This document shows positions 10,342-10,424 of a stretch of DNA of 64,000 bases, piece after piece (the stretch's first letter is position 1; each line of letters begins with the position of its first letter). The DNA comes from Octopus bimaculoides (taxonomy: Eukaryota): assembly GCF_001194135.2 (NCBI RefSeq), contig NC_068992.1, positions 31,697,545 to 31,761,544 of the forward strand. The letters run 5' to 3'. The position numbers and the translations under genes were made by a program. The notes below the pieces were generated by a model. It saw nothing but the letters and a program-made list of their open reading frames with translations. It had not been told where the DNA came from and did not search any database.

Positions 10342-10424
10342 GGGTATGGAGTGTGGCCCGTACTTCTGTGAAGGTATAATCCTTACCTATACCTTCATGG
10401 AAGTACGGGCCAATTTCCATACCC
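10342..10424 (+). ncRNA. Candidate pri-miRNA hairpin (no known family recognised)
   Basis: 24-bp stem 10355-10378/10388-10411 (22 Watson-Crick and 2 G.U pairs), 9-nt loop, small internal loop, and 9-bp basal stem 10342-10350/10416-10424. Confidence 0.5.

What the first reader, a model, noticed from the sequence alone, without database searches (positions are those of the whole stretch)
10342..10424. pri-miRNA-shaped hairpin in otherwise unique sequence
Seen: GGCCCGTACTTCTGTGAAGGTATA pairs with TATACCTTCATGGAAGTACGGGCC through a 9-nt loop. Below a small internal loop is a 9-bp basal stem (GGGTATGGA/TCCATACCC). The deviations TG/TG are G.U pairs only on the + strand. A 5' cut at 10355 gives a 59-nt precursor (10355-10413) and puts UG (10341-10342) at the canonical -14/-13 position. 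CNNC (10426-10429) is about 3 nt closer than canonical. Known: coleoid cephalopods have a large lineage-specific miRNA expansion. I do not recognise this as a conserved family. Inference: a young miRNA or hairpin RNA born from an inverted duplication.
Basis: partly seen in the sequence, partly recalled or inferred. Interest (0 to 1): 0.7.

Follow-up and report, generated by a model that had tools for sequence, protein, structure and literature searches.

The report
Transposon-junction hairpin, not a microRNA gene
The hairpin is real, but it is the fold-back junction at the cut-off front end of one copy of a very common mobile-DNA repeat, an ordinary by-product of how that repeat inserts, and nothing shows it to be a microRNA gene.

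Summary
The hairpin at 10342-10424 exists as described (RNAfold -70.9 kcal/mol, z = -12.5). It is not in unique sequence. Its 3' arm is the first part of a 5'-truncated copy (10386-10902) of a non-coding interspersed repeat with at least about 1000 candidate copies in this 2.34-Gb genome. That copy ends in a (TG)n(TA)n tail and an assembly gap. The 5' arm (10339-10384) is a 46-nt inverted duplicate of the copy's own first bases; the sequence to its left is unique.

Across 51 family loci the 3' ends are fixed and the 5' ends scattered. The flanks are often microsatellites. Twenty-two copies have an inverted partner joined head-to-head, against one tail-to-tail. At least six other junctions form comparable hairpins, at several element positions.

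This is the insertion signature published for Penelope-like retroelements, where junction palindromes are read as self-priming. The '+ strand-only G.U pairs' are two independent CpG-to-TpG decays. The arms show no significant constraint.

No Rfam family matches. Small-RNA expression and conservation in other octopods could not be tested. Verdict: an ordinary transposon junction palindrome. The 'inverted duplication' part is right, 'unique sequence' is wrong, and 'microRNA' is unsupported.

The parts
10342..10424 (+). The reported hairpin: 24-25 bp upper stem, 9-nt loop, 2x2 internal loop, 9-10 bp basal stem
   Evidence: Sequence. RNAfold -70.9 kcal/mol, z = -12.5 on +; -61.8, z = -9.2 on -.
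10339..10384 (-). Short inverted arm: 46 nt matching family reference positions R1569-1614 in reverse orientation. It is the 5' arm of the hairpin.
   Evidence: BLAST against the family reference R: 84.8%. 35/40 identical to the family consensus. No family similarity left of 10339: local alignment score 21 against a shuffle mean of 20.4.
10376..10387 (.). Junction / loop zone. These bases can be aligned to either orientation of the element (ATTATACC, CCTATACC, palindromic TATA and GGCC in the consensus). This is the probable site of microhomology.
   Evidence: Alignment of 10376-10905 to the consensus starts at ATTATACTTAAGGGCCTATACC with a 4-nt deletion. This is my reading of the sequence.
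10386..10902 (+). 5'-truncated copy of the repeat family (R1573-2043, long-form 3' end). Its first 40 nt are the 3' arm of the hairpin. It carries a copy-specific insertion of about 53 nt near 10618-10675 and a 15-nt deletion just after the arm.
   Evidence: 85.1% identity to the family consensus over 469 aligned positions.
10903..10976 (+). (TG)n(TA)n microsatellite directly after the element's 3' end. The sub-threshold Rfam mir-297/mir-466 hits here are artefacts.
10977..11489 (.). Assembly gap (513 N) inside the microsatellite. It hides the 3' flank, so any target-site duplication cannot be recovered.

Best explanation
The hairpin is a junction palindrome made when one copy of a high-copy, non-coding, non-autonomous retroposon-like element was inserted.

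Shown:
- The element copy (10386-10902) has the family's fixed 3' end followed by a microsatellite, and it is cut off at its 5' end.
- Immediately upstream lies a 46-nt inverted duplicate of the copy's own first bases, then unique DNA.
- The family as a whole has fixed 3' ends and scattered 5' ends.
- The family very often carries an inverted 5'-truncated partner joined head-to-head. This produces hairpins at many different element positions.

Inferred mechanism:
- During target-primed reverse transcription the 3' end of the growing cDNA reached about element position R1560-1573. That stretch has small self-complementary motifs (TATA, GGCC).
- The end folded back on itself or switched template and was extended for about 46 nt.
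- It was then joined to the upstream target DNA.
- After second-strand synthesis the locus reads: inverted arm, short spacer, direct copy.

This combination (5' truncation, inverted 5'-truncated copy at the 5' end, palindromes at the inverted junction, microsatellite targets) is what the literature describes for Penelope-like elements. I therefore think a Penelope-like machinery mobilised this family; my confidence in that sub-claim is about 0.55.

Since insertion the hairpin has decayed neutrally. It most likely has no function of its own. If it lies in a transcript it would simply be a double-stranded RNA segment.
For: Copy number and extent:
- about 1000 first-look candidates for each of two 3' segments.
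- The left flank is unique.

Family anatomy:
- No open frame: 39-75 stops per frame, 12% G.
- Length about 2.5 kb.
- Fixed 3' ends (short form ...CCTCTAATATA, long form ...CCCCTCATATTCT) followed by (TA)n, (TG)n, (CT)n or (CA)n.
- Several 5' flanks are also microsatellites.
- 5' ends scattered from R807 to R1672.

Orientation bias:
- 22 head-to-head against 1 tail-to-tail and 1 tandem in 51 loci, p = 5.7e-6.
- 10 against 1 in the sample retrieved with the right flank only, p = 0.012.

Sibling hairpins:
- L002: same axis, -75.4 kcal/mol.
- L043: -53.7. L052: -59.6. L059: -54.7. L010 and L005 as well.
- Short inverted arms like the window's recur: L043 44 nt, L032 33 nt, L021 95 nt.

Same template for both arms: shared GGGCC where the consensus has GGACC.

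Neutral decay:
- 7 post-duplication changes in 80 arm positions = 8.8% (95% CI 3.6-17.2%).
- This is not different from the copy's 14.9% divergence (p = 0.16).
- The TG/TG positions are CpG in the consensus.

Literature:
- PMC8557442 describes high 5' truncation, an inverted 5'-truncated copy adjacent at the 5' end, microsatellite insertion bias and undiscernible target-site duplications.
- PMC13282606 places the Penelope-like and LINE expansions in Octopus at Jukes-Cantor distance about 0.2. This copy is at 0.166.
Against: - No autonomous partner was found. The family encodes no reverse transcriptase or GIY-YIG endonuclease.
- It has no hammerhead ribozyme.
- Only one partial tandem (pseudo-LTR-like) arrangement was seen in 51 loci.
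- A LINE that targets microsatellites could therefore be the mobiliser instead; Dong/R4-type LINEs are annotated in Octopus (PMC13282606).
- The target-site duplication of this copy cannot be read because of the gap at 10977-11489.
- The loci examined are a small sample of the family (51 of at least 1000). The first 30 were retrieved with the hairpin itself.
- The per-arm divergence (8.8%) is nominally lower than that of the rest of the copy. A later origin or weak constraint cannot be strictly excluded.
- Transcription and small-RNA processing were not testable.
Confidence: 0.78

Rival explanations
1. It is a functioning young miRNA or hairpin-RNA (endo-siRNA) gene. The transposon junction palindrome has been exapted, is transcribed, and is cut by Drosha/Dicer into about 22-nt RNAs.
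For: The geometry fits a pri-miRNA: about 37 positions from basal junction to a 9-nt loop, and at least 16 paired bases in the putative duplex. Transposon-derived miRNA hairpins are known in other animals (from memory: mir-548 from Made1 MITEs). Coleoids have many lineage-specific miRNAs (PMC9699675).
Against: - The locus is repeat-derived and has sibling hairpins of different sequence and axis.
- There is no Rfam match at E <= 10.
- The arms show no excess conservation.
- The G.U pattern is CpG decay.
- A 25-bp uninterrupted duplex is atypical for conserved animal miRNAs.
- The hypothetical seed matches are absent from the 8-mer tables of PMC9699675 that are held. This is weak evidence, because those files are cut and hold no mature sequences.
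Confidence: 0.05
2. It is a miniature inverted-repeat DNA transposon (MITE), or an internally deleted long-TIR / foldback element. On this reading the two arms are the terminal inverted repeats.
For: Some family loci are long palindromes with arms up to about 1.2-1.3 kb (L069, L015). A symmetric central deletion of such a palindrome would leave a short hairpin.
Against: - The arms are internal element positions (R1569-1614), not termini.
- The right side continues for about 470 nt of element, whereas the left arm stops after 46 nt.
- Most copies run through the palindrome centres in a single orientation. Full-length copies are not palindromic.
- More than half of the loci are solo copies with scattered 5' ends.
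Confidence: 0.03
3. The inverted duplication arose after insertion by a host process: fold-back repair of a double-strand break, or a replication template switch at the small palindrome. It would then be unrelated to the element's integration.
For: The per-arm divergence (8.8%) is nominally lower than the copy's 14.9%, which a later event would explain. The junction lies at self-complementary motifs that also favour host fold-back events.
Against: The same head-to-head architecture recurs at 22 of 51 family loci, always at the truncated 5' end and almost never at the 3' end. This points to the integration step. The difference in divergence is not significant (p = 0.16).
Confidence: 0.07
4. The origin is the same (a retroposon junction palindrome), but the family is mobilised by a microsatellite-specific or other LINE (Dong/R4, CR1, RTE type) with cDNA snap-back, not by a Penelope-like element.
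For: 5' truncation and microsatellite 3' tails are also LINE/SINE traits. Dong-R4, CR1 and RTE LINEs are annotated in Octopus (PMC13282606). No hammerhead was found and only one partial tandem. A short inverted segment taken from just upstream of the truncation point (L032) resembles L1-type twin priming.
Against: Frequent head-to-head inverted copies with palindromic junctions are described as distinguishing Penelope-like elements from LINE integration (PMC8557442, PMC3846280).
Confidence: 0.25

Closest known systems
Inverted-junction palindromes of Penelope-like elements (PLEs)
   Same: The shared features are: high 5' truncation; an inverted 5'-truncated copy immediately at the 5' end; palindromes at the inverted junction (18 bp and 38 bp reported); AT-rich or microsatellite targets; and target-site duplications that are hard to see (PMC8557442, PMC3846280). 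All of these are seen in this family.
   Different: This family is non-coding, so at best it is a non-autonomous passenger. It has no hammerhead ribozyme, and pseudo-LTR partial tandems are almost absent (1 of 51 loci). Its link to an autonomous PLE is untested.
L1-type 5' inversions by twin priming (Ostertag and Kazazian 2001, cited from memory)
   Same: An inverted segment sits at the 5' end of a 5'-truncated retrotransposed copy and is created during integration. Locus L032 has exactly that layout.
   Different: Twin priming inverts the region upstream of the direct part, so the two parts do not overlap and no hairpin results. Here the inverted arm duplicates the same positions as the direct copy.
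Transposon-derived miRNA hairpins such as mir-548 from Made1 MITEs (from memory)
   Same: A transposable element supplies two complementary arms that fold into a pre-miRNA-sized hairpin.
   Different: Those loci have sequenced mature products, and the arms are the element's terminal inverted repeats. Here no product is known and the arms are a junction duplication inside a retroposon-like copy.
MITEs
   Same: Short, high-copy and hairpin-forming.
   Different: There are no terminal inverted repeats and no symmetric termini. The arms are unequal (46 nt against about 517 nt of element), and the family is truncated at the 5' end.

Membership tests
Animal miRNA gene (MirGeneDB-type criteria) | Imperfect hairpin with about 35 bp of stem and at least 16 paired bases in the mature duplex | tested here: met
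   RNAfold structure.
Animal miRNA gene (MirGeneDB-type criteria) | Reads of 20-26 nt from both arms, homogeneous 5' ends, 2-nt 3' overhangs | not testable with these tools
   No small-RNA data are available. The data sets are named in PMC9699675 (GSE192550, PRJNA791920).
Animal miRNA gene (MirGeneDB-type criteria) | Presence in a second species (the criterion used for novel octopus families in PMC9699675) | not testable with these tools
   No other cephalopod genome can be reached ('It has no relatives here').
Animal miRNA gene (MirGeneDB-type criteria) | Similarity to a described miRNA family | tested here: not met
   Rfam 15 at E <= 10 over 9000-12000: nothing on the hairpin.
Animal miRNA gene (MirGeneDB-type criteria) | Locus-specific, not part of an interspersed repeat | tested here: not met
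Penelope-like element insertion | ORF with PLE reverse transcriptase and GIY-YIG endonuclease | tested here: not met
   39-75 stops in every frame of the 2.5-kb composite. The family could only be a non-autonomous passenger.
Penelope-like element insertion | Fixed 3' end with a high degree of 5' truncation | tested here: met
Penelope-like element insertion | Inverted 5'-truncated copy adjacent to the 5' end; palindrome at the inverted junction | tested here: met
   22 head-to-head against 1 tail-to-tail. Junction hairpins.
Penelope-like element insertion | Insertion bias for microsatellites / simple AT-rich DNA | tested here: met
   Variable microsatellites follow nearly all 3' ends and precede several 5' ends. 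This is descriptive; no genome-wide control was run.
Penelope-like element insertion | Partial tandems forming pseudo-LTRs | tested here: inconclusive
   One same-orientation partial tandem (L010) in 51 loci.
Penelope-like element insertion | Hammerhead ribozyme in the pseudo-LTR (canonical clades; absent in Naiads) | tested here: not met
   Rfam at E <= 1 on L069, L073, L009 and L015: only microsatellite artefacts.
Penelope-like element insertion | Termini shared with an autonomous PLE of the same genome | not tested
The PLE-like remnant in the window shows no significant similarity.
MITE / TIR DNA transposon | Terminal inverted repeats at both element ends, flanked by a target-site duplication | tested here: not met
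   The arms are internal positions R1569-1614. The left arm ends after 46 nt while the right side continues for about 470 nt. Full-length copies are not palindromic.
Helitron | 5' TC, 3' CTRR preceded by a hairpin, insertion between A and T | tested here: inconclusive
   The short-form end ...CCTCTAA|TATA fits CTRR|T. The long-form end ...CATATTCT does not. The 5' terminus is seen in only two copies. Pervasive 5' truncation and head-to-head pairs are not Helitron traits.

The most novel reading that the evidence does not exclude
Self-primed junction palindromes of this retroposon family, of which the window's hairpin is one of probably dozens to hundreds, are transcribed and feed small-RNA or RNA-editing pathways in octopus. 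This would make Penelope-type integration a recurrent birth mechanism for hairpin-RNA or young miRNA loci and ADAR substrates in coleoids.
Probability: 0.06. Interest if true: 0.55.

Novelty: new member of a known kind. Interest (0 to 1): 0.17.

Why it matters
Mainly as a caution. In repeat-rich cephalopod genomes a thermodynamically excellent, pri-miRNA-shaped hairpin can be a routine by-product of retroelement integration, and strand-specific G.U pairs can come from CpG decay alone. Covariation between sibling hairpins would also mislead, because each palindrome copies its own template.

Secondarily, it documents a non-coding family of about 2.5 kb, with at least about 1000 candidate copies, in an octopus genome. 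The family carries the tandem/inverted, microsatellite-targeting insertion signature described for Penelope-like elements. Such junction palindromes are a plausible source of double-stranded RNA in a lineage known for heavy A-to-I editing.

Tried and rejected
- **Rfam on the hairpin region and on four family copies.** Only microsatellite artefacts (mir-297, mir-466 and similar, all below gathering scores) and no hammerhead.
- **Supplements of PMC9699675, searched for the arm sequences and for hypothetical seed matches.** Nothing was found. The files hold no mature sequences at all (let-7 is absent), so this negative is uninformative.
- **Extending the left arm beyond 10339.** The apparent pairing of 10320-10327 with 10439-10447 and a loose alignment to the family are not above shuffled controls. 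I dropped my early idea that both arms carry a shared deletion.
- **Long-TIR / foldback DNA transposon.** Considered after seeing arms of about 1.2-1.3 kb in L069. Rejected because other copies run through its centre in one orientation.
- **Walking 5' in search of an ORF.** Three rounds ended at a non-coding 5' boundary about 2.5 kb from the 3' end.
- **Target-site duplications.** Not discernible. The flanks are microsatellites, or the window's 3' flank is an N gap.
- **Similarity between the family and the PLE-like remnant at 14083-14400.** Not significant: score 40 against a shuffle maximum of 38.
- **Exact-pattern census of same-axis hairpins.** 4 loci against 2 for the control pattern, which is too insensitive at 80-85% identity to be useful.
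- **Gene context.** Whether the hairpin lies in an intron was not determined. ORFs in the window look transposon-derived.

Full report
**1. Is the hairpin there?**

Yes.
- Folding 10320-10450 as RNA gives a 25-bp upper stem with two adjacent G.U pairs, a 9-nt loop (ATCCTTACC, 10379-10387), a 2x2 internal loop and a 10-bp lower stem.
- The + strand folds at -70.9 kcal/mol, against -30.3 +/- 3.3 for dinucleotide shuffles (z = -12.5).
- The - strand folds at -61.8 kcal/mol (z = -9.2).
- The repeat finder gives the arms as 10339-10378 / 10388-10427, 40 nt and 85% complementary.
- The arms differ at 6 of 40 positions, so the palindrome is old and not an assembly or library artefact.
- TG at 10341-10342 and CTGC at 10426-10429 are present, but such short motifs are expected by chance.

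**2. Is it in unique sequence?**

No. The window is C12:31697545-31761544 of a 2.34-Gb, 145,327-contig genome. I could not verify the species.
- The 131-nt hairpin region matched 46 places. Most match one arm only, at 83-93% identity.
- The right flank 10425-11000 had 1059 first-look candidates, of which 40 were scored at 73-82% identity over up to 490 nt.
- The left flank 9800-10341 had essentially only itself.
- Coverage of the window by the fetched loci is 0-1 up to 10338, 15-19 over the 5' arm and 50-78 from 10388 to about 10760. It stays at 30-44 to about 10902, after which only microsatellite matches remain.
- So the 3' arm is the beginning of a repeat copy that runs to 10902. The copy is followed by (TG)n(TA)n (10903-10976) and a 513-N gap (10977-11489).

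**3. What is the repeat?**

I built a reference (R, 2063 nt, later extended 5') from real copies and mapped all loci to it.
- The family has two alternative, sharply defined 3' ends. The short form ends ...TTTTTCCTCTAATATA. The long form is about 140 nt longer and ends ...GAACTAAACCCCTCATATTCT.
- In nearly every copy the 3' end is followed directly by a microsatellite whose motif varies: TA, TG, CT or CA.
- Several 5' flanks are microsatellites too, sometimes the same motif as at the 3' side.
- The 5' ends are scattered, from R807 to R1672 in the sample retrieved with the right flank.
- Coverage along long copies falls off gradually towards the 5' side.
- Three rounds of walking upstream ended at a boundary shared by two copies. 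That gives a full length of about 2.5 kb, with an internal (TAA/CTA)n tract.
- The composite has 39-75 stop codons in every frame and only 12% G. It is therefore non-coding, and the family must be non-autonomous.
- No hammerhead ribozyme or any other Rfam family is present in four copies.

**4. Head-to-head pairs.**

After merging colinear matches, the 51 independent loci hold 76 copies.
- Twenty-two adjacent pairs (gap up to 300 nt, 21 of them up to 60 nt) are head-to-head, that is [inverted copy][direct copy] with the truncated 5' ends facing each other. There is 1 tail-to-tail pair and 1 tandem pair. The binomial p is 5.7e-6.
- In the sub-sample retrieved with the right flank alone, which is not biased by the hairpin, the count is 10 against 1 (p = 0.012).
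- Two further examples turned up by accident during the 5' walk (L076; L083).
- The inner ends of the two copies coincide within 5 nt in six cases: the window and L002 at R1569-1573, L043 and L052 at R1660-1667, L059 at about R1603, and L011 at R1436.
- In the other cases the inner ends are offset by 27 to more than 1000 nt. The longest arms are about 1.2-1.3 kb (L069).
- The inverted partner may reach its own 3' end or be short: 46 nt in the window, 44 nt in L043, 33 nt in L032 and 95 nt in L021.
- These junctions fold as well as the reported hairpin: L002 -75.4, L052 -59.6, L059 -54.7 and L043 -53.7 kcal/mol.
- The window's hairpin is thus one of a class, not a singular object.

**5. The window's locus in detail.**

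- The left arm 10339-10384 equals R1569-1614 inverted (84.8% to R, 35/40 to the consensus).
- Nothing left of 10339 resembles the family: score 21 against a shuffle mean of 20.4.
- The right copy is 85.1% identical to the consensus over 469 aligned positions, a Jukes-Cantor distance of 0.166.
- Both arms carry GGGCC where the consensus has GGACC, so they come from one template.
- The junction zone 10376-10387 can be aligned to either orientation. The element here contains ATTATACC / CCTATACC and the self-complementary TATA and GGCC. That is the kind of microhomology a fold-back needs, and it may explain why L002 has the same axis independently; its inverted arm is 234 nt, not 46.

**6. Mechanism.**

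The steps shown are the anatomy above. The rest is inferred.
- Reverse transcription primed at a nick in a microsatellite copied the element RNA from its 3' end.
- At about R1560-1573 the cDNA 3' end folded back on itself or switched template and was extended for 46 nt. It was then ligated or annealed to upstream DNA.
- Written out, this order of events gives exactly [rc R1614-1573][spacer][R1573-2043][tail], as observed.
- A dual-insertion model, with two independent copies primed from both strands of a staggered break, fits the loci whose two arms both reach a 3' end. It does not fit the short arms.
- Arkhipova et al. [quoted passage not shown] They left open which template is used.

**7. 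The G.U argument and selection.**

- The two 'TG/TG' deviations lie at a CpG of the family consensus (CCTTCACGGAAG and its complement CTTCCGTGAAGG). Many copies still have CG, and others have TG or CA.
- Each arm has independently gone CG to TG on the + strand. For a palindromic CpG this yields two adjacent G.U pairs on + and C.A on -. Given one decay in each arm, the chance that both fall on the same strand is one half.
- Counting changes since the duplication gives 3 in the right arm and 4 in the left, that is 7/80 = 8.8% (95% CI 3.6-17.2%).
- That rate is not significantly below the 14.9% divergence of the whole copy from the consensus (p = 0.16).
- Differences are not significantly rarer in the upper stem than in the lower stem (2/25 against 4/15, Fisher p = 0.17).
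- So there is no sign of purifying selection on the pairing.

**8. Could it still be a miRNA?**

The structural criterion is met, and everything else is either negative or untestable here.
- No Rfam family matches.
- The locus is repeat-derived.
- The 25-bp uninterrupted duplex is more like a young inverted repeat than a conserved animal pre-miRNA.
- The octopus miRNA study required presence in two species and found 164 genes (PMC9699675). Its held supplements contain no mature sequences, so my failure to find the arms or seeds there carries no weight.
- Small-RNA mapping and cross-species comparison remain the decisive tests.

**9. Comparison with known systems.**

- The family shows the insertion signature listed for Penelope-like elements by Craig et al. 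[quoted passage not shown] - Membership is not established. There is no ORF and no hammerhead (also absent in Naiads), almost no partial tandems, and no known autonomous partner.
- Penelope-like elements and LINEs expanded in Octopus at a Jukes-Cantor distance of about 0.2 (PMC13282606), close to this copy's 0.166. Microsatellite-specific Dong/R4 LINEs are also annotated there, so a LINE mobiliser remains a serious alternative.
- MITE and long-TIR readings fail on anatomy. A Helitron reading is inconclusive and unattractive.

**10. Verdict.**

- The 'inverted duplication' origin is right.
- The feature is an ordinary junction palindrome of a high-copy retroposon-like element. It is of low interest in itself. 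It has some value as a warning for hairpin-based miRNA prediction and as a pointer to a family with Penelope-like behaviour in octopus.

Noticed in passing
window 15643-15870: A second, larger palindrome: arms of 113 nt, 81% complementary, with a spacer of 2-12 nt. It is made of two tRNA-derived SINE heads (...ATGGTGTAGTGGTTTATAGCGCGGGCTACTAACCCCAAGATTCCGAGTTCGA...) joined head-to-head, each followed outward by a trinucleotide microsatellite. This is a different repeat family with the same head-to-head architecture.
   Followed up: partly
window 14083-14400 (- strand), interrupted by gap 14464-14920: An ORF remnant with the motif LYIGQTGRRLADRFAEHLRDI...SRHF. Its only Pfam hit is GIY-YIG, at a sub-threshold E = 0.015 (16 bits against a cut-off of 22.6). 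It looks like the endonuclease of a Penelope-like element. It has no significant DNA similarity to the hairpin's family.
   Followed up: partly
window 34170-34760 (- strand): An ORF with a reverse-transcriptase domain (Pfam RVT_1, E = 2.6e-19), a LINE-type remnant. Other ORFs at 8142-8250, 19933-20295 and 54977-55309 also look transposon-derived by eye.
   Followed up: partly
whole window: There are 21 assembly gaps totalling 6707 N. About 15 of them border (TA)n, (TG)n or other simple repeats. No obvious host exon was seen among the ORFs of at least 110 aa.
   Followed up: no
window 50673-50716 / 50763-50806: A 44-nt inverted repeat of complex sequence, 82% complementary, with a 46-nt spacer (I11).
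   Followed up: no
window 10905-10975: Rfam mir-297, mir-466, mir-1277 and similar hits, all below gathering scores. They are caused by the (TG)n(TA)n tail of the repeat and are not miRNA genes.
   Followed up: yes
L010 1560-1700 (G000:C1, around 100170074-100170214): A complex 5' junction. A fragment of the element's 3' region (R1808-1855) in direct orientation is followed by a 19-bp snap-back hairpin and then a 5'-truncated copy. This is the only pseudo-LTR-like partial tandem in the sample.
   Followed up: partly
family 3' ends, e.g. L009 1835-1985: The roughly 140-nt module that distinguishes the long-form 3' end has about 1009 first-look candidates. Its top hits are 88-93% identical, clearly better conserved than the element body (70-85%). 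It may be a separately mobile or younger unit, or the part recognised by the mobilising enzyme.
   Followed up: no
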